The notes under the pieces are model-generated. The model ran no database searches. It saw only the letters and a program-made list of their open reading frames with translations, and was not told the DNA's origin. Shown in pieces: positions 7,010 to 33,738 of a DNA stretch of 53,295 bases. The DNA is from Octopus bimaculoides (Eukaryota). The position numbers and the translations under genes were made by a program. The DNA is taken from NCBI RefSeq assembly GCF_001194135.2, contig NC_068990.1, forward strand, positions 79,296,240-79,349,534, in the 5' to 3' direction. Every line of letters starts with the position of its first letter. Position 1 is the first letter of the stretch.

Positions 7010-7857
7010 TCATATCAGATCATAGACGTTTGGTTGCAAAGATGGACACGGACTGAGGGACGGTAAACAACCCTCAATGTGTTCGCGCATCAATAAGAAA
7101 GTACTTTCTTCCCAGTCAGCAGAACTGTGGCTGTCTGTGACAAAGCTAGAGTCCAATGGATACAACAAGTCTGCAGACAACTGCTGTTGTTGGCTGCTGC
7201 TGCTGCTGTTGTTGTTGTTGTTGTTGTTGTAGTTATATAGGCATTTCTTTAGAAACGGCAGCTCATCCAAGTTGAATTGGGCAGCACTGAGTGCAGTGTT
7301 GTTATTGTTGCTAGTTGTACTGTAGTTGCAAATAGTCCTTGGATCGTTATTAGTGGCAGTGGCAGCAGCAGCAGCGGCAGCGGCGGCTGCAGTGGCTATG
7401 TTACCATTAAATAACAATGTATTAAGAGGCTCCGTCAGTGCTGGAACATCAGGTAAGGGTGGTGTCGGTGACATGCTGCTCTCTAGGGTCATTGGTGGAA
7501 CAAGATTATAAGAGGAGGCGGAGGAAGATGAAGAGGTTGAGCAGGTGGATGAGGCAGATGACCCTGTATAACAGGTGGACGATGACAAGGGTGACAGGGA
7601 TGATGTAGATGAAGATAATGAAGAAGGAAAAGAAAGTGTTGTCGGGGTGGCTGTGTCGATGGACAAAGAGGCTAGCGATCCACTGTTGTTGACACAAGAT
7701 GATAATGAACTGGACGAAGAACCAGAGACCGGGCTGTCACTTCCATCATCAGAGGCAAATAATAAGCTGACTCCATTCTGGGATTCTTCCGGAAGCTTCT
7801 CTGGGTCGTGCATTATCGAAGTTTTAATACTAATCTGCCTGAAGGCCTTCAAGAAAC
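7010..7857 (-). CDS. MLXIPL-like: Mondo-like gene, terminal coding exon (DCD end plus long low-complexity tail)
   Basis: Acceptor ttcccattgcAG|GT completes G|GT = Gly. FLKAFRQISIKTSIMHDPEKLPEE matches Mondo LNSLRQLGTSTSILTDP..IPE. Open for 281 codons to a stop at 7010-7012. The upstream part of ORF 7010..8017 is intronic (TA)n. Confidence 0.88.
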
Positions 7858-7965
7858 CTGCAATGGGAACAAAAAACAGAAAGTGAATAGACAGAGACAA
7901 GCATAGATAGATAAATAGACAGACAGATAAATAAACACACATATATATATCATAAATATCATATA

Positions 7966-8010
<45 letters not shown>

Positions 8011-8241
8011 ATATCATACATTTATATAACAGATATACCCAAGTTAAAGAGAATAATGAAATTTAAAAACACTGTCTAAATTACATGGGTCTCAACTCTT
8101 AGTAGCTGAGATACCAACTTTCTACATTAATAATTCTCCAACCCATGCCAGCATCGAACATAGACGTTAAGTGAAATGTTAAAAGAAAGTTTTCAGTCAT
8201 ATATGTATAGAAAGTTAATACACATAATTCAAAAACGTGTG

Positions 8242-8278
<37 letters not shown>

Positions 8279-8518
8279 NNNNNNNNNNNNNNNNNNNNNN
8301 NNNNNNNNNNNNNNNNNNNNNNNNNNNNNNNNNNNNNNNNNNNNNNNNNNNNNNNNNNNNNNNNNNNNNNNNNNNNNNNNNNNNNNNNNNNNNNNNNNNN
8401 NNNNNNNNNNNNNNNNNNNNNNNNNNNNNNNNNNNNNNNNNNNNNNNNNNNNNNNNNNNNNNNNNNNNNNNNNNNNNNNNNNNNNNNNNNNNNNNNNNNN
8501 NNNNNNNNNNNNNNNNNN

Positions 8519-8549
<31 letters not shown>

Positions 8550-9255
8550 TGTATATATATATATTCATATATATGTGTACATAATGAAAAGTTTTTGATG
8601 TTTTAAGCCTACACTCTTTGACAGAATGGGTTGAGAGGTAAAAAAATGGAGAAAGAAAGAAAACAATGTACTGGATTAATGTTTTAACATGATGATGGAG
8701 ATATAACTACACACACACACACAAAATATAGCTGTGTGGTTAAGATGTTTGCTTCCCCAACAAACGGTCTTGGATTCTGTCCTACTGTTTGTCACTTTGG
8801 GCAAGTGTCTTCCACTATAAGCCTCAGACCAACCAAAGCCTTCTGAGTGGGAAGCCTGACAGGTATACATACGGGTGTTGTGTGTGTGTGTGTGTGTGTG
8901 TGTGTTTGTATTGATGGATGGATGCATGCATGCATGGATACGTATGTGGGTGGATGTCTTTGTTTTGCCATCATGTTCTAGTTGTAAATGAGTGTCACTG
9001 TGATATAAGCAGTGCCATTCATTTCCAAAATTCTGCAAAAACATTTCTAGTCAAGTGGGGGGGGAGATATTACGTTTCTTGGAAACAGGTGAGGGTTGGG
9101 GACAGGAAGAGCACCATCCGACCCATGCTAGCATGGAAAAGTGTACATTAAATGTTGATGAAATGATCACACACAGACACACATTGACAGGTTTTAAACC
9201 TTGTTAAACTTGTGCACATCGTGCACCCTGATGCACCAAGATGCACCCTACTCAC

Positions 9256-9385
9256 CCTGCCTCAAATTGGTCAATGAAAGAAATTCTTCTTGCCAACAAT
9301 GTAAGCTTTCTAAAAAACTCTGCGTTGTTTTGGTCACCACTGTCTTGTTGAAGGAGTTGAACAATGGCTTGATAAAAAAACTGAA
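9256..9385 (-). CDS. MLXIPL-like: Mondo-like gene, DCD (dimerization and cytoplasmic localization domain) exon; absent from the ORF track
   Basis: Acceptor aatattcAG|TTC and donor CAGG|GTgagt. 130 nt, FSFFIKPLFNSFNKTVVTKTTQSFLESLHCWQEEFLSLTNLRQ plus 1 nt. Aligns by eye to the Mondo DCD FSILIRPLFESFN...WLDQYCSLPALRP. Confidence 0.9.
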
Positions 9386-9438
9386 CTGAATATTGGTGAA
9401 GGAAACCAACAGGAAGTAATTATAAAAATAATTAGTAT

Positions 9439-9719
9439 TAGAAATAATACATTTCTAAATCTCTCAGAGAGATTTATGCAGTAGTGATACGATGAAGTAG
9501 TTGAATGCTGTCAACTTAATGTGACAGTCCCTTGAAGGGAATAATATTACTGTTGGTTAGACCTGGGTGGAGGTGCTTGTCTCCCCCTTGTAAACATAAG
9601 GACACAGGAAATGTGTCAAGGCCAACAGGAAGCAGTGCAGCTTCCTAGGTCTAACCAACAGTAGTATTATTCCCTTCAGGGGACTGTCACATTAAGTTGA
9701 CAGCATACAACTACTTCAT
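9439..9719. mobile_element. Hairpin-type non-autonomous DNA element with 76-bp inverted arms and a one-sided 53-bp extension
   Basis: Arms at 9492-9567 and 9644-9719 are reverse complements. An internally deleted inverted sister copy lies at 34142-34290. Confidence 0.75.
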
Positions 9720-9922
9720 AATTAGTATTAATTAGAATATTTTGTTTGAGTTAGAGAAGGAAGGGCAACAATCATGGTGTTTCCCGAGACCTTAAAGACT
9801 CGTGAGAGAAAAGGAGAATGTTATTTTCAGATGGGCAACCAATTCACTATTTGCAACAATTTAGATTCAAGAAGCACACAGTGGTCATGTCAAACAGAGA
9901 AATGGATTAGGTCTGCCACACA

Positions 9923-10128
9923 GGCGGCGAGCTGGCAGAAACGTTAGCACGCCGGGCGAAATGCTGAGCGGTATTTCGTCTGCCGCTACGTTCTGAGTTC
10001 AAATTCCTTTCGGGGTCGATTAAATAAGTACCAGTTACGCACTGGGGTCGATATAATCAACTTAATCCGTTTGTCTGTCCTTGTTTGTCCCCTCTGTGTG
10101 TAGCCCCTTGTGGGTAGTAAAGAAATAA
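9923..10128 (+). mobile_element. SINE family B, CpG-rich (likely young) copy
   Basis: Head GGCGGCGAGCTGGCAGAAACG...GAGTTCAAATTCC (A/B boxes) and core TTTCGGGGTCGATTAAATAAGTACCAG. Confidence 0.75.
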
Positions 10129-10846
10129 CACAGAGCCATATCAACAAGAAAACTGCTGCCAATTCATAAAGAAACAACTAAAATTCTTAGATGAATATAC
10201 AACCCCCACCATCACAAACTGTTTCCATTCTTCTCTCATCATTGAGTTTAAAGATCTTTTATCCGTTACTTAAAGATTAAACATGCTTTATATTTCCTCT
10301 TCTTAACATTTATCTCTTTTTCTTCTCCTTCATGACATTCAACCTGTATTCCTTCTGGACTCGTATCATCATGTCACATTGAATTACAAGAAAACACCAG
10401 ATTGCTGGGACACCAATGGAAACTGTCTTCCTATAATGTAACTCCTGCCAGGTTTGCAGACCAAACCCTCTCCAAGTTTAATTAACAGAGAAATAACCTG
10501 AATATGTCTAATCGTTCAATATGATGTGTGATTTGATAAAGAAGTTTCTATGAAACAAGCTGGCCCAAGATCTCAAGACTTACTTTATCCCAAAATATCA
10601 CAGAGTTCAGAAGAAAATAGCTGGATGCTTTTATCCCCGTTCAAACTATTAGAGACGGTTTTATCAGTAAATGACAGGAAAGGATTACAGTCATTAACCA
10701 AGGTCACTGTGGAACACAAGCTTCAAACTTACAATTCTTTAAGTCAAGTGTTCCAACCATTTTGCTTCACAGCCATTGAATACCTGCTGGAAAAAAAGAC
10801 AAATACAAACACAGACACACACACACACACATAGAGATATAAACAT

Positions 10847-10898
<52 letters not shown>

Positions 10899-11746
10899 NN
10901 NNNNNNNNNNNNNNNNNNNNNNNNNNNNNNNNNNNNNNNNNNNNNNNNNNNNNNNNNNNNNNNNNNNNNNNNNNNNNNNNNNNNNNNNNNNNNNNNNNNN
11001 NNNNNNNNNNNNNNNNNNNNNNNNNNNNNNNNNNNNNNNNNNNNNNNNNNNNNNNNNNNNNNNNNNNNNNNNNNNNNNNNNNNNNNNNNNNNNNNNNNNN
11101 NNNNNNNNNNNNNNNNNNNNNNNNNNNNNNNNNNNNNNNNNNNNNNNNNNNNNNNNNNNNNNNNNNNNNNNNNNNNNNNNNNNNNNNNNNNNNNNNNNNN
11201 NNNNNNNNNNNNNNNNNNNNNNNNNNNNNNNNNNNNNNNNNNNNNNNNNNNNNNNNNNNNNNNNNNNNNNNNNNNNNNNNNNNNNNNNNNNNNNNNNNNN
11301 NNNNNNNNNNNNNNNNNNNNNNNNNNNNNNNNNNNNNNNNNNNNNNNNNNNNNNNNNNNNNNNNNNNNNNNNNNNNNNNNNNNNNNNNNNNNNNNNNNNN
11401 NNNNNNNNNNNNNNNNNNNNNNNNNNNNNNNNNNNNNNNNNNNNNNNNNNNNNNNNNNNNNNNNNNNNNNNNNNNNNNNNNNNNNNNNNNNNNNNNNNNN
11501 NNNNNNNNNNNNNNNNNNNNNNNNNNNNNNNNNNNNNNNNNNNNNNNNNNNNNNNNNNNNNNNNNNNNNNNNNNNNNNNNNNNNNNNNNNNNNNNNNNNN
11601 NNNNNNNNNNNNNNNNNNNNNNNNNNNNNNNNNNNNNNNNNNNNNNNNNNNNNNNNNNNNNNNNNNNNNNNNNNNNNNNNNNNNNNNNNNNNNNNNNNNN
11701 NNNNNNNNNNNNNNNNNNNNNNNNNNNNNNNNNNNNNNNNNNNNNN

Positions 11747-11817
<71 letters not shown>

Positions 11818-13039
11818 TTCCAATTTTCCACAGAAAAATGTAGCTTGTTTGGAGACGGGTGAGAGTTAGTGACAGGGAAGGCATCCAACTATAGAAAATC
11901 TACCTCGTCTAATCCATCCAACCCATGCAAGCATGGAAAAGTGGAAGTGAAAATGATGATGATGATGATGAAGACGACGACGACGATGGCAATGAAGATG
12001 GTGATCCAGCATATGCATGTGAGTTTGTGTATGTGAATGTAGAGAGATTTGATGGGGGGGGGAGTATGTATCAGTGTAAAAGTCTGCTTGTAAGACCAAG
12101 AATCATGAGTTCCTTCTACTGTGCAAGCTGTCCCTACAGCTGCCCTTTTATACTGACAGGGGTTGTAAGGTCAGACACCTGGATGACCTGGAAAAATCCA
12201 TTGTCATCAGCTACCCTACCATTCATGGCCTCCAACTTCTGCCAACAAGAAAATATTTATATGGTAGCTCAACTTGCTAGAAACAGCAGCGAAATGTCAC
12301 TCAAATCACACTCTAACATCTGAGAAACACAGAAACACGGGTTAAGGAGTGGGGGGGAGAGGAGGGAGATAGAAAAGTAAGGAGAATTCTCTGAGATATA
12401 CAGAGAGAGGGAGAGAGAAGAGTATGGGGGTGGAGAAAGATACAAAGATGTATCATTATCATCATCATCATCATCATCCTTTCATTCTCATCACCTGTTC
12501 TGGCCTGGGTTGAATAGCTTGAGAGGATCTGACAGACCCAAGGACTGCATTGTGCTCCAGTATGGGGAGGGGGTGGATACAGGAAGATAAAAAGCTAGGC
12601 AAAAACCTTCTAAAAGATAAAGAGAATCATACAACAGAGAGAGAAGGAAGAAGAGAAGGAAAGAGGGGAGAGAAGGAGGGGAGAGGGGGAGAAAGAAATT
12701 TAGGGAGAGAAAAGGTAAAGAAGGAAAAAATTTAGCAAATTCAGAAAGAATGTTGCAGAGAGAAATTAGGGAAAGAATCTGAAGAAAAGTCTGTAGGAAT
12801 TTTTAAAATGTTCTTTAAGAAGGTGGAGAGAAATTGAATGAGATATAGCTGCTATTTCTAGGAAACCAAAGGACCACATAAAGTTTTCCTCTAACAATCA
12901 AAGGATTATTTTTAAATTTGCAAAGCTGAGTCACAAATTCTTGTACTGAGCACCTTGGACTAAAGGTAAAACTCATGATTTTTGTGGAGTTTGTATAGGA
13001 TAGAATCCATGACATATCTATGTTTGTAATGGTGAAGGT

Positions 13040-13360
13040 GTGTGGCTTAGTGGTTAGGGCATTCGAGTCATGATCGTAAGGTCTTGAGTTCCAGTTCCAG
13101 CAATGTATTGTGTCCTTGAGCAAGACACTTTATTTCACATTGCTCCAATCCAGTCAACACGCAAAAATGATTCGTATCTGAATTTCAAAGAGGTCAGCTT
13201 TGTCACACTTTGTGTCATGCTGAATCCCCCTGAGAACTACATTACGGGTACACGTGTCTGTGGAGTGCTCAGCCACTTGCATGTTAATTTCACGAGTAAG
13301 CTGTTCCGTTGATCAGATCAGCTGGGACCCTCGTTGTCGTAACCAATGGAGTGCCACATA
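13040..13360 (+). mobile_element. SINE family D
   Basis: GTGGCTTAGTGGTTAGGG head and GTGTCCTTGAGCAAGACAC core. Near-colinear with 47160-47425. Confidence 0.7.
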
Positions 13361-16300
13361 TTTGTAGTATGAGATACAGCATGTCTATGTGTGTGGTATA
13401 GGGGTGTGGGTAGTGATTTTCTTCACTACTTCAGGGAGTGACGACCCTGTCTGACACAAGTCCCAGGCTCAGCTGGCTCCGGCTGACAGTACCCAGTATG
13501 GGCCCCTATCCAGGGTTATGGAAAGGAGACAACCTTCAAAGAAATCTGAAGTGAAGCCCCATAGGCAGTTTAGTGTTTGACTCAACACTCTTCCGGCAGC
13601 TCCTGCAACCAAGCTGGTGCCAAACGTAATGCTCTGCACTCCTTTGGACTACGTCAGCAAGGTCAAGAGAGGAATCCTGACGATTGAGCTACCCAGGATT
13701 TTCTTACATCTAGCCCAGGCCTGCGCAAAACTGGAGAGGAAACTGGAGAGGACATGAAATGTAAAAACCAGACTGGATTAGTTTATGCGCAACTCCATTG
13801 TCTCCCGAGACAAAAGGATGCCAACAACAACAACAGGATATAGTACATGTGGTATAAGATATAGTGTGGTGTTGTGAATTTAGTCTGTTGCTGCACTAAT
13901 TCACAGCCTGGTCAACATGACCAGCCACCATCCTATCTTTTTGCTACCATTACAAGAGGAGTGGAAATCTTGGGAGGTATAAGCACCAGTTCTACTGTTA
14001 TACTGGTTAGTTAACTTTGTAACTAGTTAAATATTGGTTTCAGATCTTGGCACAAGGCCAGAAATTTGGGGTTAGTTGATTACATTGACCCCAGAGTTCA
14101 ACTGGTACTTATATTATCAACCCTGAAAGGATGAAAGCTAAAGTCGATCTTGGCAGCATTTGAACCCAGAACATAAAGTCAGAAGTAACGCCACTCAGCA
14201 TCTTTTCTGGTGCATTGATGATGCTGCCATGTGACAGCCTTATAAATAACTAATTAAATATTTAATTAAATACAACTGACAGCCTTATAATTAATTAAAT
14301 ATTAATTTGCAAATAGAGTATCAGAAATCTGACCTGCAAGGCTTCATCGAACTCAGAGCAAATTCTGAAGATGATCCACAGTCCAGTCTATGGTCAAGAA
14401 CTAGTAATGTCAATGCCCAGTACTGCTGCCATCTGCCACACAGTAAAGGAATCGATTGCAGAGAATCTAAAAGTGGGTGGGGAGGAGGACTAGTCAATGT
14501 GCAAAATTATACAAGTTTCCCATCTCTAACTTAACCACATCATCTCCTGACTCGATTCCTCCTCAAATTTCATGCAAAATCCTTGCATTTATTCTTGCAC
14601 TACACAGGTGCATCTGCAAAATTCAACCAAAGTTGGTATCAACCACTGAAGGAGGTCTTCAATGACCCTCACCACTGTCCATACTCCTTTCACTAATAAA
14701 CAGTTGAAACAGCACAGAAGTATCATTTTAGTGTCTTTCATTCCCATATTTCGGTTAAAATACACTCTCTTTGTCTCAGTGAATTTTGAAAATAATGAAG
14801 AATTTAGTCAAAAATAACTTTGTTGTTATGAAGCTGGTGTTTGGAACATAAATTAACGTGAATTTTGAAAGAAGGTTTTAATTTAAAACAAGAAAATGGT
14901 ATTACAGAGGCAGAGGTGGTCACATGTGGGTTGATACCAAAATGGTTAAGAACACAATTTTCATTATTTCTTAATGAAACAGTCTAATGATGAAGGATAA
15001 AATATTTTATTACATTTCTGAAAACCAGTTAGTGACATAATTCTACTGCATTCATCATTAAAATTAAATTTTAAAAACAGTTGAACACTAAAGATTAATT
15101 AGTTACTTCTAACGAGCTTCTATGAACTCAGGTCAACAACAGACATGAGATAAACGATCATCTAAAACGGTAGATTTTGATGTGTATGTGTGTGTGTGTG
15201 TGTGTATGTGTGGTGAGGTAGAGTGAGGGAATCTGGAAGAAAGGTGAATTAGTAGAATGTTTGATAACCTGTTGGGAAGAAACCAGAAAAATGAACAGTT
15301 AGAGATGATGAGGTTAACATCAGCTGAAGAGAAACAAACTAGCACTGAGGTATTAAAAGACTTTCATGAGTCGTGTCACAAGAATTGGCAGATGACAACA
15401 GTTGTCACATATTTCAAAGCGTACTCATTGTGTTGTAGCAGTCATTTCCATTTGCCACATGGCTTGGCCAAATAAAATAAATCTATTTTACTAAACAGTG
15501 ACCTACATAAGCCACATTGCGACTGGACTGAGCTGCAGAGGTATTTCAATTATTTTGTATTCTATCACAGGAAGCTGTATTGTAATGTAGACGTGACACA
15601 GAACCCCATTGGCCCCAGCGACAGTAGCAGAGGTAATTAGATGCTAATGGCTTAATGATTGATTCATTGAACTAGAGACACCTATAACACTGTGATAGCT
15701 ATGATTTCTGATACTGGGTGGGTGTCTTGGCTCAGAAACTGAATTCCTGTTTACCTGGTAAGAAAATTACCAGTTTAACAGGTAAAATTGAAGAACACCT
15801 CACTAATGATTCGCTGAGTTAATTAGAAAGAGTTAGGAGGGACACAACACTGAAGCCAAATCCAGAATTGATCATTGCCAAAATAATGGTTTTTTTGAGA
15901 CTCTGTGGAATTGGTTGTACAAGAGTTGTGCTTTCTGACTAAACCTTAACATCTACCGTCAAATATATTCCTGATAACAAACAATTGCATTGAATTACTT
16001 GATTATTTGCCAATGAAATTAAAGAGGTCACATGACAATATTTACTTTCTGTTTTTTTATGATTCCAATGATTTATATAAAAAATGACATTTTTTATATT
16101 CAATGAGAAAAGTTGGCCACAACATAAACAGCAATTTTTCTCAGAACTAACGAGATATTCTTGTATGATGAGAGAAAAACATCTAACATTAATTATGTTT
16201 CTGTGAATAGAGTTAACTAATAACTCATTAGTAGTAATAACATTAATTAGTTTTGATCATAATTAGTCTCCATCAGTGTCACTAAATAAAGTACACATTT

Positions 16301-18012: not shown

Positions 18013-18045
<33 letters not shown>

Positions 18046-18046
18046 T

Positions 18047-19002: not shown

Positions 19003-19043
<41 letters not shown>

Positions 19044-19387
19044 GTATGTGTGTGTGTATATATATATATATATATACATACATATGTATACTTACATATA
19101 TATATATACATATACATATATATATACATACACACACACACACATACACATATATACATATAAAATTATGTATAGTTATATATATATATATAAATACGGG
19201 CATCTATATATNNNNNNNNNNNNNNNNNNNNNNNNNNNNNNNNNNNNNNNNNNNNNNNNNNNNNNNNNNNNNNNNNNNNNNNNNNNNNNNNNNNNNNNNN
19301 NNNNNNNNNNNNNNNNNNNNNNNNNNNNNNNNNNNNNNNNNNNNNNNNNNNNNNNNNNNNNNNNNNNNNNNNNNNNNNNNNNNNNNN

Positions 19388-19552: not shown

Positions 19553-19652
19553 TGAATCTCGTCAGTCAAGGCACCTAACTGTTGCCGCAGGGCACATGCC
19601 TCATCTCTCTGGGCCTTAGATTCGGCCTGAAGTTGTCGACAGTGTTCCGACG
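19553..19652 (-). CDS. MLXIPL-like: Mondo-like gene, helix 2 end and leucine zipper exon
   Basis: Acceptor ccctattgtAG|CG completes G|CG = Ala from the previous exon. Donor ATTCA|GTaagt. 100 nt, (A)SEHCRQLQAESKAQRDEACALRQQLGALTDEI, with an L-Q-L-L heptad pattern. Confidence 0.9.
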
Positions 19653-22480: not shown

Positions 22481-22483
22481 AGC

Positions 22484-22528
<45 letters not shown>

Positions 22529-22799: not shown

Positions 22800-23880
22800 G
22801 CAATAACAGAGGAATTCAAGATGGGCTGCCTCTGGGAGCTCCTCTATGCTGATGACCTTGTTCTAATAGCTGAGTCACTGCCAGAACTAGAGACGAAGTT
22901 TAGGGTGTGGAAGCAAGGTCTAGAATCGAAGGGCCTTAGGATTAACCTAGCAAAAAACAAAGTCCTAATAAGTAGGAAGGCTATCAAATCACAAATCCCT
23001 TCAGATAGATGGCCCTTTTCGATCTGTTAAATAGGAGTAGGTAGAAACTCTATCGGATATACCCAGTGTAAGCTATGGACACATAAAAGGTGCAGCAATA
23101 TCAAAGGAAGGCTAACCGGGAAGATAGTTTTGTGTGTGGCAGATGCATAAGGGCAATAAACATTGAAGATGTACAGAAAATAGATTTNNNNNNNNNNNNN
23201 NNNNNNNNNNNNNNNNNNNNNTTAATAGCTTCCACTACCTAGGCATCCATGTTTGTAGTGGGGGTGGTTGCTCTGAGAGTGTAGCAGCTAGAATAAGAAT
23301 AGCCTGGGCAAAGTTCAGGGAGCTCCTACCTCTGCTAGCAACTAGAGGCCTCACGCTCAGGGTGAAAGGTAGACTAATGATGCATGTGTGTGAACTGCCA
23401 TGCTACATGGCAGTGAAACAGAGGCCATGACTGCTGAGGACATGCATAGGCTTGAAAGAAATTAAGCTAGTATGATCTGCTGGATGTGTAATTTTAGTGT
23501 GCATACACGACAAAGTTTAAGTGCCTTGAGAGAAAAGTTGGACAAAAGAAGCATCAAATGTGGTGTGCAAGAGAGACGACTGCGTTGGTATGGTCATGTG
23601 TTACATATGGATGAGGACAGCCGTATGAGGAAGTGCCACACCTTAACTGTAGAAGAAACGTATGGAAGAGGTAGACCCAGGAAGAGATGGGATGAGGTGG
23701 TGAAGCATGACCTTCAAACATTGGGCCTCACAGAGGCAATGACAGGAAACCAAGACTATTGGAGATATGCTGTGATTGAGAAGACCCGGCAACTAAAGTG
23801 AGATCACAGCCATGCATGTCCGGCCCGGTTAAGAGTACCCCTGATGCATCGGGCGATATGATATGCTTGAGAAGACCTGT
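22800..23880 (+). pseudogene. 5'-truncated RTE-clade LINE: RT C-terminal part with a PHD-like insert
   Basis: LLYADDLVLIAES (RT catalytic YADD), SFHYLG, ARIRIAWAKFRELLPLL and ERRLRWYGHVLHMDE...GRGRPRKRW. Stops, frameshifts and an N-gap. Confidence 0.85.
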
Positions 23881-25165: not shown

Positions 25166-25486
25166 CAGTAGAACCTTGGTTTATGAATTTAATTTGTCCC
25201 TGGAGGCCATTCGCTACCCAAAATTTTCCTAAACTGCAACTATTTTTCCCATAGCAAATTCAAGAGAAAGCACAGCAAATTCAAGCAGGAATGTGCACTG
25301 AGTGAAAGCAAGACAGCAACTGATGCTCTCCCTGTCATATTCCCAGCTCGTCCCCAACCATATTTGCCGGATTGCATGTTCGTTGCTCAAGACACCATTT
25401 GTCAACCAAAATGTTTTATGCTAAAAAAATTGTTCATAAATCAATTTTTTCATGATGAGAGGCATTCATAAACTGAGGTTCCACTG
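25166..25486. mobile_element. pogo/Tigger-like MITE
   Basis: TIRs CAGTAGAACCTTGGTTTATGAAT and ATTCATAAACTGAGGTTCCACTG|TA. Confidence 0.7.
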
Positions 25487-27999
25487 TATATAAACACACA
25501 CACAGATATATATGTAGATATGTGTGTATTTATGTATTTATGTATGTAATTGATACAAGACAGAAAGTGTAGGGACATCAATGCTTAATACTTGATGTGA
25601 AAACCAAGTTCACATGCTGCCTTTCAGTATTGTCTGGTCATCACAGAGGACACCAAACAGGAACAATAAATCACAGAACAGCTTAAAACAAACAAATTTT
25701 TTATCCTGAGATGACACGAAGAGTTTTATAAAAAAAATCTATGAGGATCAAATCCTCAATTGACATGATCCCTAGTTTAAGTGGAAGAATATTTCTGCAT
25801 TTAAAAAAAGAGAAATGAGAAACAAATTTAAGGAGACTATTCTTCTATCCCAGAGCTGTGTTTACCATTTTATTAACCAGAAAAAAATTGTCAACAACGA
25901 AATTGTGTGATTATTTTATCGTTCAACAAATTTTCCATAAAAGGAAACAACATGTGAGACACCTCCTATTATTCTAAGAGCAAGACTGAAGCTTGTTTCT
26001 GATTTTCTTTCTCTTGTGGCACAACCATAAATCAATGCCTGTTTGTGCTGGTCTTTGTTCCAATTTGGAAGACATTTGTTTTTATAATCAGTCCTGCTTG
26101 TTTACTCCCCTCCCCTACCCAAATCAAGAGAATCCTAAATAAATTCCACAACCCTAAACTTATTACCGTTCAAGGAGCACCCTGTTAATAGAACACACAC
26201 CTAACTAGACCACTCTACTGGAACTACAGTGATCTTTCTGTGGAGGGATAAACTAGAATGATGTAAAGGATCGGAAAGAAAAACTTCAAAGAGAAACACT
26301 CGAGTTTAGCAAAACAAAAAAACTACTACTAATAATAATAATAAATTATATTTTAAAAAGTTTGAAGAGTAATAGAAGAAAAAGAGAAAATTTCAAATTA
26401 GACAAATAAACAACATTACAAATATAAAAGGATAATAAAAAAACAAACATTATTAATTATTTTTTTTTTAAATCAAACAAAAAACACATTTTCCAAAATA
26501 ACAAGCAAGAGCATTTCTCTTTGAAGAATTAAACGTCTTTAAGAATAACCATTTTAAGTATGAAATATGTGTATGCTCAGAGTTCCTAACTTTGGGTAGT
26601 TTAGAGATAGTGGAGAAGGAAGAAAAAACTAGATTTGACCGTTTTAACGAAGCCTGGTTGAAGTCTAAACTTTTCTGAAGAAGAAACGAAAACTTTTATT
26701 TTAACCAAGTTTAATAAAAGATCATACCAAATTACCTCCCCTTACATACTTCTACGTCTTAAAACTAATTTAATCTTATTTCTTACCCAAACAAGTTTGT
26801 TTTACAAACTAACGCTGCTAGATACAGGAAATATTACCATTTTCCATTGAAAAATATTTTCACAACAAAAAAATTCCTAATCTCCATCATTTTACTGATG
26901 GGAAGAATTATTCTCATTTTAAAAGACATTAATTGTAAAAGCTGTTTTTCCAACAAATTGTTCGGATTTACAACCCCCCCCCCCAATAAAAATGAAGTTA
27001 TTTTTCACAAAAACTATCAATTCTTCAAATACTTAGAAAATTAGAAAACTGCATCATTAGGAAAATTTAATTTTATTCTTAATTCATTAACAATCCACAT
27101 CTCAAATCTAGAATACAGGAATCTTTGTTAGATGGATATATTTAGTGATCTGGTTTGGGACCCAACACTTGTTTCCAATTCATATTGAAGGGGGCAACAA
27201 GCTGGCAGAATTGTTAACCCACTGGGCAAATGCTCAACAGCATTTCATCAGCCTTTACGTTCTGAGTTCAAATTCTGCCAAGGTTGATTTTGCCTTTCCT
27301 CCTTTCAGGGTCAATAAAATACCAGTTGAATTCTGGGGTCAATGTAATCAACTTAACCCTTATGCTAAAAATTTAAATAAATTTTAGGAACTAACTGAAT
27401 GAAGCATACACAATACAAATTACTTTTTTCCAAGTTAAAGGAATAAAAATAATAATTGTCAGTTATAAATGATATTTGTTTCATAAATTAAATCGGGGAA
27501 TTTCATGTTTTTCATTTGTTTACTGTTACTGATAATTTAAAAATCAAGATAAACGTGGGTGGAGGCACCAGAAAGATCACTGTAAACAGGGAACATACAA
27601 AATGTTTTTTTTTGTTTTCTCATTTTTTTTTTCATAAAATAAATAATTCTTACAAACAAATCAACTAAAAGTAAGAAAAAAGTTATGTTTAATATTGTTT
27701 TTATGTATGTATAAAAATGTTACAATTCAGAGACAATATATATACATACATACATATCAACTTACATTATACATTTTACAGTTTAATGTAAGCAATGATA
27801 ATAACAACAAATCAAAAAAAAAACTATTCTTAGAAAAATATTGTTTCTTTTTTTTTTTCAATTTATGAATTTTATTTGCTATTTCTGTATATTTGTTTTG
27901 ATTTATTTACATTTTTAAAATTATTCTTTTAACTATCTTTGTGGAGAAGGGCAATGGAGGTAAATAGATAAAAAAAAAAATAAAAAGATGGTAACGTAC

Positions 28000-28087
28000 C
28001 TTTAAAAAGCATTGAGGCCTTACTGTCTTTGGTTGAAGGGTTCTCTTGGAGGGCAGGCACAAGTTGGCGCAGAGTTTCAAAGCCTCT
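28000..28087 (-). CDS. MLXIPL-like: Mondo-like gene, helix1-loop-helix2 exon
   Basis: Acceptor tgtttcAG|AGA and donor AAAG|GTacgt. 88 nt, RGFETLRQLVPALQENPSTKDSKASMLFK plus 1 nt. Resembles Mondo GFDTL..LV..L......KVSKATTLQK. Confidence 0.92.
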
Positions 28088-28544
28088 CTGAAACATCAGC
28101 ATAACCAGATAGAGACAGGGTGGATCGACAAACAGTGCAATGACCCAGAACAACAACAACAACAACAACAACAACAATAACATCATCATCATCATCATCA
28201 TCATCACAAATCAAAAAAAAATCTTTGGAAAATGAACTAGCAATGGAATTGGTCATGCAGGCATTACATAATGATGGTCATGTTAGGAGGAGAGAGATGT
28301 CTTTATTTGCAACAAAGAACAATGCTTCTATATACAGTAATTACTCGCCATATCATGGTTCACCTATCGTGCCCTCAGTACATTGCGGATTTTTCTGGCT
28401 AATTAAGTAAATTTATATTGCAGATTCCTCAGTACATTGCAGGTTTCTGTGGTTGATAAGTATTTATATTTTTTTAGATTTTAATTATTTCTGTGGTAAA
28501 ATAAGCATTTTCACACCTAAAAATTAATTAATGAATAGAAATAC

Positions 28545-29420
28545 AGTGCTAGTGCCACATAAAAAGTACCATTCGATCGTGGCTGATGCCAGTGCTGCTT
28601 GACTGGCTTCCATGCTGGTGGCACGTATAAAAGCACCCACTACAGGGTACTGGGACAAAAAGTGTTCATTTAAGGGAAGTTATATTGCCAAACATGAGAG
28701 ATTGGGGTCCATGATTCTACAGGAAATGGATTTGCAAGAAATTCAGGGTTTCAATGATTTATGACGATGTTCCAGAAAAGGATGAAATCTTTGTATTGGA
28801 CTAAAAACAATAAACAAATAAATAAACTTTTGATAAAGAAAAACATGGGTTTCGTTTTTACAATTTTTCCCTTTTACACGAGGACATGAGACCTTTTTGT
28901 CTTTCTTGGATTTTTTCTGCAAAAATATAAGACATCCCCCGAAAATAAGCCCTTTTTTGGATGCAGAATTAATATAAGACCAGATCTTATTTTCGAGGAA
29001 ATATGGTAGATCAGCAATCTCTGGCTCCCGTGCCGGTGGCATGTAAAAAAGCACCATTCGAGCATGATCGTTGCCAGCGTCACTTTATTGGCACATGTGC
29101 CTGTGGCACGTGAAAAACAATATTCGAGTGAGGTCATTGCCAGTGCCACCGAACTGGCTCCTGTGCAGGTAGCACATAAAAAACACCATTTAAGTGTGGT
29201 CGATGCCAGTACCACCTGACTGGCCCTCATACAGGTGGCACATTAAAGCACCCACTACACTCTCGGAGTGGTTGGCGTAAGGAAAGGCATCCGGCTATAG
29301 AAACTCTGCCAGATCAGATTGGAGCCTGGTGCAGCCTTCTGGCTCACCAGTCCTTAGTCAAACCATTCAACCCATACCAAGCATGGAAAGCGGATGTTAA
29401 ACAATGATGATGATGATGAT
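28545..29420 (+). mobile_element. SINE family C with ~60-bp internal tandem units, interrupted by DNA-transposon fragments
   Basis: Repeated GCCAGTG....ACTGGC...GTGGCAC.TAAAAAGCACC units; TA|CAGGGT insertion start near 28643; tail CAAGCATGGAAAGCGGATGTTAAA(GAT)n. Confidence 0.5.
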
Positions 29421-31539
29421 GATTTTGAACAAAAAGTAATGTAAAAGAAATAAAATGACTGAGAAACAATATTTATAGAAAAAAATAAAAAAGAAAAAGC
29501 AACAAGTCCTGATTTTGTTGGAGAAGAAGACATTTGTTGAGTAACAACTGTAAGAAGCGGATTCCTTTTGATCCTGGAAAGGAAAATGGCAAATGCAAAG
29601 GAGCTGGCGGGGGGGAATGTATTGAAAGANNNNNNNNNNNNNNNNNNNNNNNNNNNNNNNNNNNNNNNNNNNNNNNNNNNNNNNNNNNNNNNNNNNNNNN
29701 NNNNNNNNNNNNNNNNNNNNNNNNNNNNNNNNNNNNNNNNNNNNNNNNNNNNNNNNNNNNNNNNNNNNNNNNNNNNNNNNNNNNNNNNNNNNNNNNNNNN
29801 NNNNNNNNNNNNNNNNNNNNNNNNNNNNNNNNNNNNNNNNNNNNNNNNNNNNNNNNNNNNNNNNNNNNNNNNNNNNNNNNNNNNNNNNNNNNNNNNNNNN
29901 NNNNNNNNNNNNNNNNNNNNNNNNNNNNNNNNNNNNNNNNNNNNNNNNNNNNNNNNNNNNNNNNNNNNNNNNNNNNNNNNNNNNNNNNNNNNNNNNNNNN
30001 NNNNNNNNNNNNNNNNNNNNNNNNNNNNNNNNNNNNNNNNNNNNNNNNNNNNNNNNNNNNNNNNNNNNNNNNNNNNNNNNNNNNNNNNNNNNNNNNNNNN
30101 NNNNNNNNNNNNNNNNNNNNNNNNNNNNNNNNNNNNNNNNNNNNNNNNNNNNNNNNNNNNNNNNNNNNNNNNNNNNNNNNNNNNNNNNNNNNNNNNNNNN
30201 NNNNNNNNNNNNNNNNNNNNNNNNNNNNNNNNNNNNNNNNNNNNNNNNNNNNNNNNNNNNNNNNNNNNNNNNNNNNNNNNNNNNNNNNNNNNNNNNNNNN
30301 NNNNNNNNNNNNNNNNNNNNNNNNNNNNNNNNNNNNNNNNNNNNNNNNNNNNNNNNNNNNNNNNNNNNNNNNNGGGAGAGAGAGAGAGAGACCTAATTCA
30401 AGCAGGTTTATGATCAAGGACACTCCATCCATGACTTCCTCACCTTTTTCTGTTTCACACAAGTTTTTGTGTCCTTTCTTTATTAAGACAAAAGAATGAA
30501 AATGAGGGGGATCTGGCTGCTCTTTCAAGCAAACTGAGTCTCTCCTACATTAGCTCCTAAAGTGAAGTGTCTGAATGTGGTGTGTAATATATGAGTAATG
30601 TGTGTGTGTGTATGTGTGTGTGTGTGATGTACAAGTAGTATATGTGTGTGTATGCATGTTTGTGTGTGTGAGTGTGTATGTGTTTGTGTGTATGTGATAG
30701 TGAATAGTGAGTTGTGTTTGTGATACGTGTTTGTGTATACACACACACACACACACACACGTGTAATACAAGTGTGTGGTGGGTTGGAGTGGGGGTCAGG
30801 GAGTATATAGAGGGTTGTTTTTTGTGCTACAGAGGATATCTTGATTAAGTCCCTATGTTGTGCGTATATGTATACATACACAGCCAGGTCCCCTTTTATA
30901 CATCCCATGTCATTAAATGTAGGGAAAAAGTTATTTCCACTTTAACCCACCCCCACCCCCACACAGACATTTCCCAGTTGTTCTCCTTTAATTCTATTCA
31001 TATCCAATCTTGAAAGTCTGAAATCCCAGGACTTTTTCGAAAAGATGACAGGAAAAGGAGGGAATCTTTATCAAGGAAGTAAAGGGAGATGAAGGGGGAC
31101 GAGGGAGGGGGTGGGGTAGCGAAAGACTGCATTATTTAAAATGTGTCTGGTTGGTTTGGTTTTAGGTGTATATAGACAGTGAAGTTGGTGGTGGTTGTCG
31201 TGGCAGCTCATTGTCAAGTGACTGCTGGAGTAGAGGTCAGAGTGAATGTGGGACACAGATTGTGTCAGCCACAAGAATGTCTTTCCCCATTTGCAAAAGT
31301 GTATGTGGGGGGGAGGGGGAAGGACTATCTGCCAATGACAGTCTCTCCTAAGGATTGTCTCTCTACAAACAGTATCTCAAAATAACTTCAATCTATTCCA
31401 GGTGTTGGCAGGGAATCTGCTAAACTACAGCAACACACACCTTCTCCACTCACCATCACCACTATAACTACTGATACTTCATTCATCCCTCAACGTCATC
31501 ATCATCATCATCATCATCACCATTTTCATCTTTTTCACT

Positions 31540-31925
31540 TATTTCAGTTGTTAGGCTACGGCCATGCTGGGGCACCGTCTTGAAGAACTTTTAGTTAAAT
31601 GAATCAACCCCAGCATGTTTTTTTTTTCAAGCCTAGTACTTTTTCTATCGATCTCTCTTGCCAAACTACCAAGTTATGAGAACATAAACACACCAGCACC
31701 AGTTGCCAAGTAGTGGGGGGGGGGTATCAAAGACAGACACAAAGACACACACATACATACATATACATACATACATACAACAGGCTTCTTTTAGTTTCCA
31801 TTGACCAAATCCGCTCACAAAGCTTTGGTCATCTCAGTGCCCAAGGTGCCATACAGTGGGACTGAAACCAGAACTGTGTGGCTGGGAAGCAAACTTCTTG
31901 CTACACAGCCACACCTGCACCACAC
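31540..31925 (-). mobile_element. SINE family A, near full length
   Basis: Reverse complement of the GTGTGG..AGAAGTTTGCTTCCCA head, GGCACCTTGGGC core and CCAGCATGGCC tail. Confidence 0.65.
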
Positions 31926-33585
31926 TCTTATACTCCAGACATCTCCCACCACCACCACCACCACCGCCACCCATTTATGCTACCCTCAGAGACCAAGTTC
32001 TCATCCTGATACAAAACCAGTGAATATTTTTCAGTCCTGAAACCAAGGAAAATGTTGAGATTCCATTTGAAGAGAAAATCAATCTGAGAATTTAGGAAAG
32101 ACTTTGGTAGGTTGAACCCTTCCATGACCTCTGACCCTATTTTATTGAGCCCCGTAGGGTTGATCAATAATGTTGACTACCAACAGAAACTAAATCCTAT
32201 TTAAAAGGTATTTAGCTGGGATCCTTTCTGGTTCCGTACCAACAGGGAAACCTCTACAGCTGTCATGGATAATCCTTTGGCTCATGGGACTTTCTGAATG
32301 ACAAAATGCATGAAACATAATCTTGAATTCTTTTCGTCATGTGGTCCACCTGATGATGAGCCACGTCTCATGTGGCCAACTTCTAGAAAGTTCTTTGACC
32401 TGTTAGAGATAGCAACCAAATCTTCTTCAAACCACATGCCTTCAGTCTTCAAAAGGAATATGGCGTACAATGAGGTCTTGAGTTACCTGCATATAATGGT
32501 CAGAGAATCTTTCATCATCGGTCTACTTGACTGGAGCTAATCTAAAACAAAACTAACAATTCAAACCTCAAAAAAAAAGGGAACAAAACCACACAAACCA
32601 CCCCTAAAAAGGGCAACAAACATCAACAATAAATAAACTACAAACATAAACACAAACATATCAGAAACATTAATAGCGTCATTAGACCATAAATTAGTGT
32701 CTCGTTAATTAAGTAGAGTAATTAGTCTCTCATGAATAACTTCATTAGACCAAGATACTGTAATGGTGGGGGGAGACGCACCATTAATGGAACAACTGTT
32801 CTAAAAAATAATAATTAGCAAGAGAGGCAGTATTAAAACCAAAGATGCCCTGGCTGAATATACTGCAGTAGTTATCAGGAGAGGATCCCTCTAACTGGCT
32901 TTTGGTGCAGAATGCATGCTTGTTTGTTTATATTACAAGCAGGGAGATAACTCCTCACCAACTCCAGTGTTGAGGCCACCAGATCACATGATTTCTATCT
33001 TCCTTGATCTCATCGGTGATGGACGCTCAACTATGAGGGATAGCAGCAACTCACCTTCATGCTAGGGATATACAGAAAACCCATGCCTGAACAGGCATTG
33101 GTGATGCGATTAGTGACAGAAGCAGTATTAATATTGAGAAGGGATATTTATCTCTACATAAATGTGGAACAGACTAGCTTAATCATAACTAAGTTATTTT
33201 ACTAAATTCTTTGTTATATTTAAAGCAATTGAAAGAAACACAGAGCATCTCAACAGAAATATGGTAACGAAAGGGTTAAAAGAAATAATGTGTGTGTATG
33301 TGTGTATATATATGTATGTATGAATGTACATCTGTCTGTATGTATGAATGTATGCATGAGAAAGTAAATAAAAAAAGCGTATTATTTAAAACAGATGGAA
33401 AAAAATAAATAAATAAATCAAGAAAAGATTACAGGAATCCATAATTTGAAGACAAGCATAAGTTTAACGACAACAACAACAACAACAACGACAACTGTCA
33501 CCACAGCGCCGCCATTATGTAGAATGGTGAGGGATAAAGGAAAAGGCTAAACACATTTCAGTGCTTCCTGTGTTAGAAAACAAAC

Positions 33586-33738
33586 CTGGATTTTATTCCT
33601 CCTCCTGTGTTCAGCATTGATATGAGAGACTCTTTTATGGCGAGGAAGTGGGTTCGTTTGTCGTCCAGGTTTCTTACCATTCTTAGGTTCTGGTGACGGT
33701 GTGGGGGAAGATAAAGAGTCAGTGTTAGACAGAATCAT
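33586..33738 (-). CDS. MLXIPL-like: Mondo/ChREBP-like bHLH-ZIP gene, first visible coding exon (basic region and start of helix 1)
   Basis: Acceptor tatttttcAG|ATG and donor ATCCAG|GTttgt. 153 nt = 51 codons, MILSNTDSLSSPTPSPEPKNGKKPGRQTNPLPRHKRVSHINAEHRRRNKIQ. Keeps the group-B bHLH H5/E9/R13 residues. Ends in phase 0, matching the next exon. Confidence 0.9.

What the first reader, a model, noticed from the sequence alone, without database searches (positions are those of the whole stretch)
7010..33738. Rewired Mondo/ChREBP paralog: bHLH-ZIP-DCD with no visible glucose-sensing N-terminus and a new long C-terminal tail
Seen: five phase-compatible exons encode a bHLH-ZIP plus a Mondo-type DCD (FS..I.PLF.SFN; TSI..DP..LPE). 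Only ~33 aa precede the basic region, the ATG sits at the first base of the exon, and I found no MCR-like exon upstream. Known: MondoA/ChREBP have several hundred N-terminal residues carrying the MCR glucose-sensing and activation module, and they end soon after the DCD; Mlx is short and lacks the TSI..DP tail. Inference: this could be a sugar-independent Mondo-type Mlx partner, either a constitutive activator using a C-terminal activation domain or a dominant-negative competitor. The basic region (HINAEHRRRNKIQ) differs from Mondo (HISAEQKRRFNIK) but keeps H5/E9/R13 for CACGTG binding.
Basis: partly seen in the sequence, partly recalled or inferred. Interest (0 to 1): 0.72.

Follow-up and report, generated by a model that had tools for sequence, protein, structure and literature searches.

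The report
Sensor-less second Mondo gene of octopus
This is a real octopus gene, a second copy of the sugar-sensing transcription factor Mondo/ChREBP that keeps the DNA-binding and partner-binding parts but lacks the sugar-sensing part. The same copy exists in molluscs, annelids, brachiopods and ribbon worms, so it is an old, little-studied gene family and not an octopus novelty.

Summary
The exons, motifs and coordinates are real, on the minus strand. ATG is at 33738 and the stop at 7010-7012.

The five-exon model is incomplete. A sixth coding exon of 41 codons (…LQLPDSG…NWKFWI) lies in assembly gap 10899-11746, as the gap-free O. vulgaris locus shows.

The gene is neither the ordinary Mondo nor Mlx. 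The same genome has a full Mondo with MCR I-V on another contig (C25) and Mlx on C9.

The window gene belongs to a 100/100-supported clade inside the Mondo side of the tree. The clade is marked by 'NPxPRHKR' before the basic region and by a non-Gln residue after the basic-region Glu. It occurs in cephalopods, bivalves, gastropods, annelids, a brachiopod and nemerteans.

None of 38 clade members matches an MCR profile, against 73 of 117 other Mondo representatives. Spliced transcripts of the nearest relative have stops in all frames upstream of the ATG.

The long tail is under purifying selection within Octopus (dN/dS 0.21) but cannot be aligned outside it.

bHLH catalogues already count two Mondo-type genes in lophotrochozoans. 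This is therefore a new, mis-annotated member of a catalogued, functionally unstudied family. Sugar-independent action through Mlx is plausible but untested.

The parts
33586..33738 (-). Coding exon A (153 nt, ends in phase 0). It runs from ATG 33738-33736 through MILSNTDSLSSPTPSPEPKNGKKPGRQTNPLPRHKRVSHINAEHRRRNKIQ. It carries the clade signature 'NPLPRHKR', the basic region and the start of helix 1.
   Evidence: Sequence and borders cag|ATG … CAG|gtttgt. tblastn with P0003 gives E=3e-20. Pfam HLH covers residues 35-89 at E=1e-12.
28000..28087 (-). Coding exon B (88 nt, ends in phase 1): RGFETLRQLVPALQENPSTKDSKASMLFK. It covers the end of helix 1, the loop and the start of helix 2.
   Evidence: Borders tttcag|AGA … AAAG|gtacgt. 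tblastn with P0003 gives E=2e-8. The intron position is the same as in the canonical Mondo on C25.
19553..19652 (-). Coding exon C (100 nt, ends in phase 2): (A)SEHCRQLQAESKAQRDEACALRQQLGALTDEI(Q). It covers helix 2 and the leucine zipper, with Leu at four of five heptad 'd' positions.
   Evidence: Borders ttgtag|CG … TTCA|gtaagt. tblastn gives E=2e-8. The heptad was read directly from the sequence.
10899..11746 (-). Assembly gap that should hold the missing coding exon M. In O. vulgaris this exon is 124 nt and encodes (Q)KLQLQLPDSGVDRVSYPKTDLRNLFQEYVENRTKQNWKFWI. It carries the Mondo-invariant Leu-Pro and the Mlx-contact Lys-Phe of the DCD.
   Evidence: The O. vulgaris locus L026 has the exon at about 7386-7509. 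L026 3044-6010 aligns to window 14772-11747, and L026 7546-7627 aligns to window 10898-10817. L026 6011-7545 therefore corresponds to the gap. The exon is not elsewhere in G000.
9256..9385 (-). Coding exon D (130 nt, phase 0 in, phase 1 out): FSFFIKPLFNSFNKTVVTKTTQSFLESLHCWQEEFLSLTNLRQ(G). This is the DCD core with the LFxSF and Trp positions.
   Evidence: Borders attcag|TTC … CAGG|gtgagt. tblastn with P0003 gives E=3e-10. Site table.
7784..7857 (-). First part of coding exon E: (G)FLKAFRQISIKTSIMHDPEKLPEE. This is the last DCD helix of the Mondo type, which Mlx lacks.
   Evidence: Border ttgcag|GT. tblastn with P0004 gives E=5e-4. Octopus Mlx ends without this helix. The Pro832 equivalent is kept.
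7010..7783 (-). C-terminal tail of 257 codons plus the stop codon (7012-7010). It is rich in Ser, Thr, Asn, Gln and Ala (63% S+T+N+Q+P+G+A), with poly-Ala, poly-Asn and poly-Gln runs. It ends with acidic/aromatic patches: QFNLDELPFL, DLLYPLDSSFVTD and DWEESTFLLM.
   Evidence: The frame stays open to the same stop in O. bimaculoides and O. vulgaris, with only in-frame indels. dN=0.044, dS=0.21 and dN/dS=0.21. Composition. No significant match to the tails of other classes.

Best explanation
Shown. The window holds the octopus orthologue of a lophotrochozoan-wide paralogue of Mondo/ChREBP.
- It arose by DNA-level duplication of Mondo, because all bHLHZ-DCD intron positions are shared with the canonical gene.
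- It kept the class-B basic region, the leucine zipper and a Mondo-type DCD.
- It has no MCR I-V (LID/GRACE) module.
- It evolved fast and acquired clade-specific features: 'NPxPRHKR' just before the basic region, and His, Tyr, Leu, Val or Ile in place of the otherwise invariant Gln after the basic-region Glu.
- The same genome keeps a full canonical Mondo (C25, about 92 kb) and Mlx (C9).

Inferred. The zipper and the DCD residues known to mediate Mondo-Mlx pairing are kept (Lys-Phe of NWKF, Ser and Phe of LFxSF, Trp801, Arg812). The protein therefore most likely dimerises with Mlx and binds CACGTG-type/ChoRE sites. Without LID/GRACE, its activity cannot be gated by glucose metabolites in the way Mondo's is.

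Its transcriptional output would come from lineage-specific disordered regions, which in Octopus is the 257-aa tail with acidic/aromatic patches. Failing that, it would act by competing with Mondo for Mlx and for sites.

I put identity and architecture at 0.9 or more. I put Mlx-dependent, sugar-independent action at about 0.5.
For: Canonical Mondo is elsewhere in the genome. MCR III-V, the central region and the bHLHZ-DCD exons lie at C25:31463680-31485153, and MCR I/II at C25:31393050-31393679. Mlx lies at C9:34805540-34812400.

The exon borders fall at the same residues in both genes.

Careful IQ-TREE of 82 sequences over 206 columns:
- The paralogue clade has support 100/100.
- The Mlx split has support 100/100.
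- Window plus P0003 has support 100/96.
- The clade lies inside a 99/97 group with the protostome canonical Mondos.

Clade members are named. They are Haliotis, Patella, Gigantopelta, Littorina, Lymnaea, Biomphalaria, Pomacea, Solemya, Saccostrea, Pinctada, Pecten, Potamilus, Mactra, Dreissena, Mya, Tegillarca, Lingula, Capitella, Owenia, Lamellibrachia, Lineus and Tubulanus.

The MCR profile hits 0 of 38 clade proteins (best 4.2 bits) against 73 of 117 other representatives (up to 412 bits).

Transcripts of P0003 from 9 RNA-seq runs are intronless over the six exons. They have a stop 16 codons upstream of the ATG and stops in all frames.

Site table:
- Basic-region H, E and R are kept in 31 of 31 clade members.
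- Pro736 is kept in 31 of 31 (Lys in Mlx), Trp801 in 31 of 31, Arg812 in 30 of 31 and Pro832 in 29 of 31 (absent in Mlx).
- The residue after the basic-region Glu is never Gln in the clade, but is Gln in 43 of 44 Mondo and 6 of 6 Mlx.

Tail dN/dS is 0.21.

The pairing roles of the DCD residues are taken from PMC3323566.
Against: - No octopus RNA was available, so the 5' end at 33738 and the use of the tail in mRNA are inferred.
- Exon M is unsequenced in this genome, so DCD integrity rests on O. vulgaris.
- 21% of the 100 kb upstream of the window is N.
- Three 'Mondo-invariant' DCD positions are changed in octopus: P813Q, L819F and L822I. This could weaken or redirect pairing.
- The tail is not conserved outside Octopus, and several orthologues have no tail at all. 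A C-terminal activation domain therefore cannot be the family's general mechanism.
- No binding, dimerisation or reporter data exist for any family member in the literature I could search.
Confidence: 0.6

Rival explanations
1. The same gene family, but the protein works as a competitor or repressor. It lacks both GRACE and the central activation region of Mondo. It would titrate Mlx or occupy ChoRE/E-box sites without activating, and so damp the sugar response.
For: The whole N-terminal two-thirds of Mondo is absent, including the only mapped activation regions. Orthologues in Haliotis, Patella, Lingula, annelids and nemerteans end 8-23 aa after the DCD. The pairing residues are kept.
Against: Tail-bearing members repeatedly show acidic/aromatic clusters near the C-terminus. 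The Octopus tail is under purifying selection. The tail-less members have N-terminal extensions of 92-335 aa and unknown function, which could activate.
Confidence: 0.3
2. The protein no longer uses Mlx. It homodimerises or pairs with another bHLHZ protein (canonical Mondo or a Max-network member) and binds a shifted site set.
For: The clade has a long stem (0.9 substitutions per site) and long branches. The Gln next to the basic-region Glu is replaced in every member. There is a new conserved PRHKR flank, with a GRP core in most molluscs. Positions 813, 819 and 822 of the DCD are relaxed.
Against: The Mondo-specific and shared DCD determinants are largely kept across five phyla. That is hard to explain without the ancestral partner. 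Mlx is present in the genome.
Confidence: 0.1
3. The exons are simply the 3' part of an ordinary Mondo gene. Its MCR exons would lie in assembly gaps or far upstream.
For: The ATG directly follows a good splice acceptor. Introns of 70 kb occur in the canonical gene. Gaps make up 21% of the upstream 100 kb.
Against: Whole-genome searches with MCR I-V find only C25, which has its own bHLHZ-DCD exons. The tree separates the two genes with full support. The relative's transcripts and the gene models of more than 20 species lack MCR. The octopus 'MI…LSNTD' start aligns with the relative's 'MI…LSNSD' start.
Confidence: 0.03
4. The octopus copy is a decaying pseudogene that has lost exon M.
For: Exon M is absent from the assembly. 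The genome's own annotation holds only a 267-aa piece, P0002.
Against: All other exons are intact with canonical splice sites. dN/dS is 0.21, with only in-frame indels against O. vulgaris. O. vulgaris has exon M intact, exactly where the window has its gap.
Confidence: 0.03

Closest known systems
Canonical Mondo / ChREBP / MondoA (MLXIP, MLXIPL; Drosophila Mondo)
   Same: It has the class-B basic region (H-E-R), a leucine zipper and a five-helix Mondo-type DCD, including Leu-Pro after the zipper and the terminal 'TSI..DP..LPE' helix. The intron positions are identical to those of the octopus canonical gene. It falls on the Mondo side of the tree.
   Different: It has no MCR I-V, no central region, and only 31 aa before the PRHKR flank. 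A non-Gln residue follows the basic-region Glu. There is a conserved PRHKR flank. Three 'invariant' DCD sites are changed. A 257-aa tail follows the DCD, whereas canonical Mondo ends about 20 aa after it.
Second lophotrochozoan member of the bHLH family called 'Mlx' in the Ledent/Simionato nomenclature ('Mlx2' of Bao, Xu and Shimeld 2017, PMC5381572)
   Same: That paper's Table 1 lists two genes of this family in Patella, Lottia, Biomphalaria, Crassostrea, Capitella and Helobdella, three in Lingula, and two in human (MLXIP and MLXIPL). It also reports a gastropod-only 'GmlxlHLH' linked to 'Mlx2'. The clade found here occurs in the same taxa. Its gastropod-only 'PRHKRPSHKRAE' subclade has neighbouring accession numbers or shares a scaffold with the main copy in Pomacea, Littorina, Gigantopelta and Haliotis.
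   Different: The paper classifies bHLH domains only, includes no cephalopod, and does not discuss loss of the glucose-sensing module. The equation Mlx2 = this clade is my inference from counts and linkage, because its sequences and supplement were not available.
ChREBP-beta (N-terminally shortened isoform from an alternative promoter; from my own knowledge)
   Same: It is a Mondo-type factor freed from the inhibitory LID, and therefore not glucose-gated.
   Different: ChREBP-beta is an isoform of the same gene and keeps GRACE and the central region. The octopus gene is a separate locus that lacks both.
Mlx (TCFL4; Drosophila Bigmax)
   Same: It is a short bHLHZ-DCD protein without MCR. It shares the DCD core (WKF, LFxSF, Trp).
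   Different: Mlx separates at 100/100 in the tree. Mlx has Lys where Mondo and this clade have Pro736, and it lacks the last DCD helix. Octopus Mlx is a different gene on C9.

Membership tests
Mondo/ChREBP (MLXIP/MLXIPL) | Class-B bHLH basic region (His, Glu, Arg contacts for CACGTG) followed by a leucine zipper | tested here: met
   H, E and R are present in the window protein and in 31 of 31 clade members. Pfam HLH matches at E=1e-12. Leu heptads in exon C were read directly.
Mondo/ChREBP (MLXIP/MLXIPL) | Mondo-type DCD/WMC with the eight Mondo-invariant sites (L735, P736, W801, R812, P813, L819, L822, P832; PMC3323566) | tested here: inconclusive
   Five of eight sites are identical, with L735 and P736 read from O. 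vulgaris exon M. Three are changed: P813Q, L819F and L822I. P736 and P832 tell Mondo from Mlx and are kept in 31 and 29 of 31 clade members.
Mondo/ChREBP (MLXIP/MLXIPL) | N-terminal Mondo conserved regions MCR I-V (LID + GRACE glucose-sensing module) | tested here: not met
   There is no MCR match in the window or in 100 kb upstream. In the genome MCR is found only on C25. The MCR profile hits 0 of 38 clade proteins against 73 of 117 others.
Mondo/ChREBP (MLXIP/MLXIPL) | Phylogenetic placement with Mondo and not with Mlx | tested here: met
   The Mlx/Mondo split is 100/100, and the window gene is on the Mondo side.
Mondo/ChREBP (MLXIP/MLXIPL) | Obligate heterodimer with Mlx; glucose-dependent nuclear activity | not testable with these tools
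   This needs co-IP and reporter assays. Here only the conservation of the pairing residues could be shown.
Lophotrochozoan MCR-less Mondo paralogue ('PRHKR' clade; probably 'Mlx2' of PMC5381572) | Signature NP[ILV]PRHKRxSH[IK]xAE followed by a non-Gln residue | tested here: met
   The window has NPLPRHKRVSHINAEH. The signature is listed for the clade. The residue after Glu is H, Y, L, V or I in 31 of 31.
Lophotrochozoan MCR-less Mondo paralogue ('PRHKR' clade; probably 'Mlx2' of PMC5381572) | Monophyly with the other members | tested here: met
   The clade of 31 has support 100/100 and appears in 100% of bootstrap trees.
Lophotrochozoan MCR-less Mondo paralogue ('PRHKR' clade; probably 'Mlx2' of PMC5381572) | Coexists with a canonical Mondo and Mlx in the same genome | tested here: met
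   In octopus: C25 Mondo, C9 Mlx and the C10 window gene. In Babylonia both a canonical protein (P0023) and a clade member (P0104) are present.
Lophotrochozoan MCR-less Mondo paralogue ('PRHKR' clade; probably 'Mlx2' of PMC5381572) | Identity with the gene named Mlx2 by Bao et al. | tested here: inconclusive
   Copy numbers and the linkage of the gastropod-only duplicate agree.
Mlx | Mlx-type DCD (Lys at the Pro736 position, four helices, no terminal helix) and grouping with Mlx in trees | tested here: not met
ChREBP-beta-type short isoform | Same locus as full-length Mondo, alternative first exon, GRACE retained | tested here: not met
   The gene is on a different contig from the canonical gene. 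No GRACE/MCR V match was found.

The most novel reading that the evidence does not exclude
Spiralian animals run a second, sugar-blind arm of the Mlx network. In this reading the PRHKR-type Mondo paralogue pairs with Mlx. Its altered basic region (non-Gln after Glu, and a PRHKR flank with an AT-hook-like GRP core in molluscs) and its lineage-specific acidic tails or N-extensions would regulate a distinct or overlapping ChoRE gene set constitutively. It would then compete with glucose-gated Mondo for Mlx. This would overturn the statement in the Mondo literature that invertebrates have a single Mondo (PMC3323566).
Probability: 0.3. Interest if true: 0.65.

Novelty: new member of a known kind. 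Interest (0 to 1): 0.5.

Why it matters
The Mondo/ChREBP field treats invertebrates as having one Mondo, whose N-terminal module senses glucose metabolites (PMC3323566).

Here a second Mondo-derived gene has been retained for more than half a billion years in at least four phyla (Mollusca, Annelida, Brachiopoda, Nemertea). It keeps the DNA-binding and Mlx-pairing parts but has no sensor.

That offers a natural experiment on what a bHLHZ-DCD does without LID/GRACE. It also marks a likely unrecognised regulator of metabolism in molluscs of economic and neurobiological interest.

In practical terms, the gene is broken up in octopus annotations. O. vulgaris has two models, of 138 and 316 aa. In the window's own genome, the only predicted protein my searches returned for this locus is a 267-aa tail piece. 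One exon sits in an assembly gap, so the locus needs re-annotation.

Tried and rejected
- The weak DCD-like hit at C23:19068475 was first taken as a possible Mlx. tblastn with MLX found nothing there. The real Mlx is on C9.
- The first bHLH exon of octopus Mlx was not found in the 20 kb fetched, so Mlx entered the tree without its basic region.
- The PDB sequence search found only Myc, Max, USF and similar proteins. There is no solved Mondo or Mlx DCD, so no structure-based test was attempted.
- Pfam finds nothing beyond HLH in any member or in canonical Mondo.
- The first protein search was swamped by low-complexity words from the tail. It was repeated with the core region only and with an index-free profile search.
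- BLAST between the tails of different classes found nothing significant.
- No upstream exon resembling the extra 23 N-terminal residues of P0003 was found.
- The supplement of PMC5381572 is not held.
- Literature searches for a described MCR-less spiralian Mondo found nothing.
- The species of P0003 (runs SRR27666059-86 and SRR24189490) could not be determined. I call it cephalopod-like only because it is sister to octopus.
- Structure prediction was not run. The allowed alignment would have been shallow, and no solved DCD exists to compare with.

Full report
**What is in the sequence.**
The window is G000:C10:79296240-79349534 of a 2.34-Gb assembly. Its closest protein matches are from Octopus vulgaris.

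On the minus strand, five exons with canonical AG/GT borders join into a 437-codon frame. They are A 33738-33586, B 28087-28000, C 19652-19553, D 9380-9256 and E 7857-7010. The frame encodes:
- a basic region (HINAEHRRRNKIQ);
- a helix-loop-helix (Pfam HLH, E=1e-12);
- a leucine zipper;
- the DCD motifs FSFFIKPLFNSFN and TSIMHDPEKLPEE;
- a 257-residue low-complexity tail.

Each exon is hit by relatives at E = 3e-20 to 2e-3. The exon E frame is the longest open frame in the window by a factor of two.

**The gaps, tested first.**
Exon C ends in phase 2. Exon D with its conserved 'FS' start (9385) begins in phase 0. The five exons are in frame only through a second AG at 9381/9380.

Relatives have about 41 more residues between C and D. 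The gap-free O. vulgaris locus L026 has them as a 124-nt exon. That exon encodes (Q)KLQLQLPDSGVDRVSYPKTDLRNLFQEYVENRTKQNWKFWI.

Collinear alignment places L026 6011-7545, which contains this exon, exactly in window gap 10899-11746. The exon is nowhere else in the assembly. The gene therefore has at least six coding exons and a predicted 480-aa product.

The other five gaps are intronic. The A|B, B|C and D|E junctions align to relatives with no residue missing.

**Not the ordinary Mondo and not Mlx.**
Whole-genome searches with MCR sequences hit only contig C25. There a complete canonical Mondo spans about 92 kb, from C25:31393050 to 31485153. It has MCR I-V, a central region and its own bHLHZ-DCD, and it ends about 20 aa after the DCD. 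Its exon borders in the bHLHZ-DCD fall at the same residues as in the window gene. The copies therefore arose by DNA-level duplication.

Mlx is at C9:34805540-34812400 and lacks the last DCD helix. No MCR-like exon is found in the window or in 100 kb upstream of it, of which 21% is N.

**The family.**
An index-free profile search of 1.84 billion representatives and two word-indexed searches recover a set of proteins with a shared signature. The signature is NP[ILV]PRHKRxSH[IK]xAE followed by H, Y, L, V or I in place of Gln.

Named members come from these groups:
- gastropods;
- bivalves;
- annelids (Capitella, Owenia, Lamellibrachia);
- a brachiopod (Lingula);
- nemerteans (Lineus, Tubulanus).

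Cephalopods are represented by the window gene, O. vulgaris and an unidentified relative, P0003.

A careful IQ-TREE (82 sequences, 206 columns, LG+C20+F+G4) gives these results:
- Mlx versus the rest: 100/100.
- The PRHKR clade of 31 sequences: 100/100, with a stem of 0.9 substitutions per site.
- Window plus P0003: 100/96.
- The octopus C25 gene with Argonauta Mondo: 100/100, elsewhere in the tree.
- The PRHKR clade lies within a 99/97 group that also holds the protostome canonical Mondos.

The order within that group is unresolved. The date of the duplication (lophotrochozoan stem) therefore rests on the taxon distribution.

**No sensor anywhere in the family.**
An HMM of the MCR region built from 32 canonical Mondos scores 0 of 38 clade proteins above noise (best 4.2 bits). 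It scores 73 of 117 other representatives at E<1e-5, up to 412 bits. Most of the misses are short fragments.

P0003 comes from nine RNA-seq assemblies. These contigs are continuous across all six exon junctions. They have a stop 16 codons upstream of the ATG and stops in all three frames. The short N-terminus is therefore real in the nearest relative.

The octopus start 'MI-LSNTD' aligns with P0003 'MI-(23 aa)-LSNSD'. This favours 33738 as the true start, although no octopus RNA could be consulted.

**What is kept and what is changed.**
The source for the DCD sites is PMC3323566. It lists eight Mondo-invariant DCD sites and names K/F of WKF and S/F of LFxSF as heterodimerisation determinants.

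| Site | PRHKR clade | Other groups or octopus |
|---|---|---|
| Basic-region H, E, R | 31 of 31 | — |
| Pro736 | 31 of 31 | Lys in Mlx |
| Trp801 | 31 of 31 | — |
| Arg812 | 30 of 31 | — |
| Pro832 | 29 of 31 | absent in Mlx |
| K/F of WKF and S/F of LFxSF | largely kept | — |
| Positions 813, 819, 822 | relaxed | Q, F, I in octopus |
| Residue after the basic-region Glu | never Gln | Gln in 43 of 44 Mondo and 6 of 6 Mlx |

**The tail.**
Between O. bimaculoides and O. vulgaris the tail keeps the same stop and has only in-frame indels. dN is 0.044, dS is 0.21 and dN/dS is 0.21, so it is translated and constrained.

Across classes the tails are not alignable. Two architectures exist in the clade:
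- A short N-terminus (31-75 aa) with a long tail (125-750 aa), in cephalopods, bivalves and some gastropods.
- A longer N-terminus (92-335 aa) with no tail, in Haliotis, Patella, Lingula, annelids and nemerteans.

**Mechanism.**
The architecture and the orthology are shown. The rest is inferred.

The retained zipper and DCD determinants imply pairing with Mlx and binding to CACGTG/ChoRE-type sites. The absence of LID/GRACE implies no Mondo-type glucose gating.

Whether the protein activates or competes is open. Activation could come from the acidic/aromatic patches in the tail. Competition would work by titrating Mlx and sites. I weight activation or other independent regulation slightly above pure competition.

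**Relation to what is known.**
The Mondo literature states that invertebrates have a single Mondo (PMC3323566).

The bHLH catalogue of Bao, Xu and Shimeld 2017 (PMC5381572) lists two genes of the family it calls 'Mlx' in most lophotrochozoans. That family has two members in human, which I take to be MLXIP and MLXIPL. The paper also reports a gastropod-only 'GmlxlHLH' linked to 'Mlx2'.

This fits the clade found here. It also fits the gastropod-only PRHKRPSHKRAE subclade, whose members have neighbouring accession numbers or share a scaffold with the main copy.

RefSeq labels members 'ChREBP-like', 'MLXIP-like' or 'uncharacterized'. I found no paper that notes the missing sensor or studies the function.

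**Verdict.**
It is a new, mis-annotated cephalopod member of a catalogued but uncharacterised family, not a new kind of gene.

Noticed in passing
window 22800-23798 (+), in the intron between exons B and C: Three broken open frames of a non-LTR-type reverse transcriptase with a YADDLVL motif. Pfam RVT_1 matches at E=2.7e-5, below the gathering score. This is a decayed retroelement on the strand opposite to the gene.
   Followed up: partly
window 33637-33663 (-) and orthologues: Most mollusc members carry K(R/K)KCGRP(A/R)NP(I/V)PRHKR directly before the basic region. This is a GRP core with basic flanks that looks like an AT-hook (resemblance from memory). Octopus has a degenerate PGRQ, and annelid, nemertean and brachiopod members lack GRP.
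   Followed up: no
window 7013-7330 (-) and the tails of orthologues: Tail-bearing members often end with acidic/aromatic 'DFDL'-like clusters. Examples are Babylonia YDFDLSDIPLLDL, Littorina VDFDLPQGDFEIPDSF, P0003 TFDLSSFDLTKF, heterodont bivalves EDDSLMxLLKVDxLD, and octopus QFNLDELPFL and DWEESTFLLM. These are reminiscent of acidic activation motifs. They were seen by eye only and not tested statistically.
   Followed up: no
G000:C25:31393050-31485153 (+): The canonical octopus Mondo spans about 92 kb. A 70-kb intron separates the MCR I/II exon from the MCR III exon. 21% of the 50 kb fetched (31445000-31494999) is N.
   Followed up: partly
L026 (O. vulgaris OX597823.1:1887866-1910111) and the window's own annotation: The gene is fragmented in annotations. 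O. vulgaris has a 138-aa HLH model that ends at a TGA in the wrong frame inside exon M, plus a separate 316-aa model that starts inside exon D. For the window's genome, my searches returned only a 267-aa piece that starts at the Met of 'MHDPEKLPEE'.
   Followed up: yes
G000:C25:31483434-31483472 versus L026:7465-7503: A 39-nt stretch is 95% identical between exon M of the paralogue (O. vulgaris) and the corresponding exon of the canonical Mondo. It encodes …NQNWKFWI. This is strikingly high nucleotide conservation for such an old duplication.
   Followed up: no
window, flanks of gaps 8279-8518, 10899-11746 and 19212-19387: These gaps are bordered by dinucleotide and AT-rich microsatellites, (CA/TG)n, (GA/TC)n and (TA)n-like runs, which probably caused the assembly breaks.
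   Followed up: no
Gastropod loci (Pomacea PVD28017/PVD28018; Littorina KAK7107136/7; Gigantopelta XP_041354674/5): Gastropods carry extra copies of the paralogue. The 'PRHKRPSHKRAE' subclade has accession numbers adjacent to the main copy, which suggests tandem duplication. Octopus shows only one copy.
   Followed up: partly
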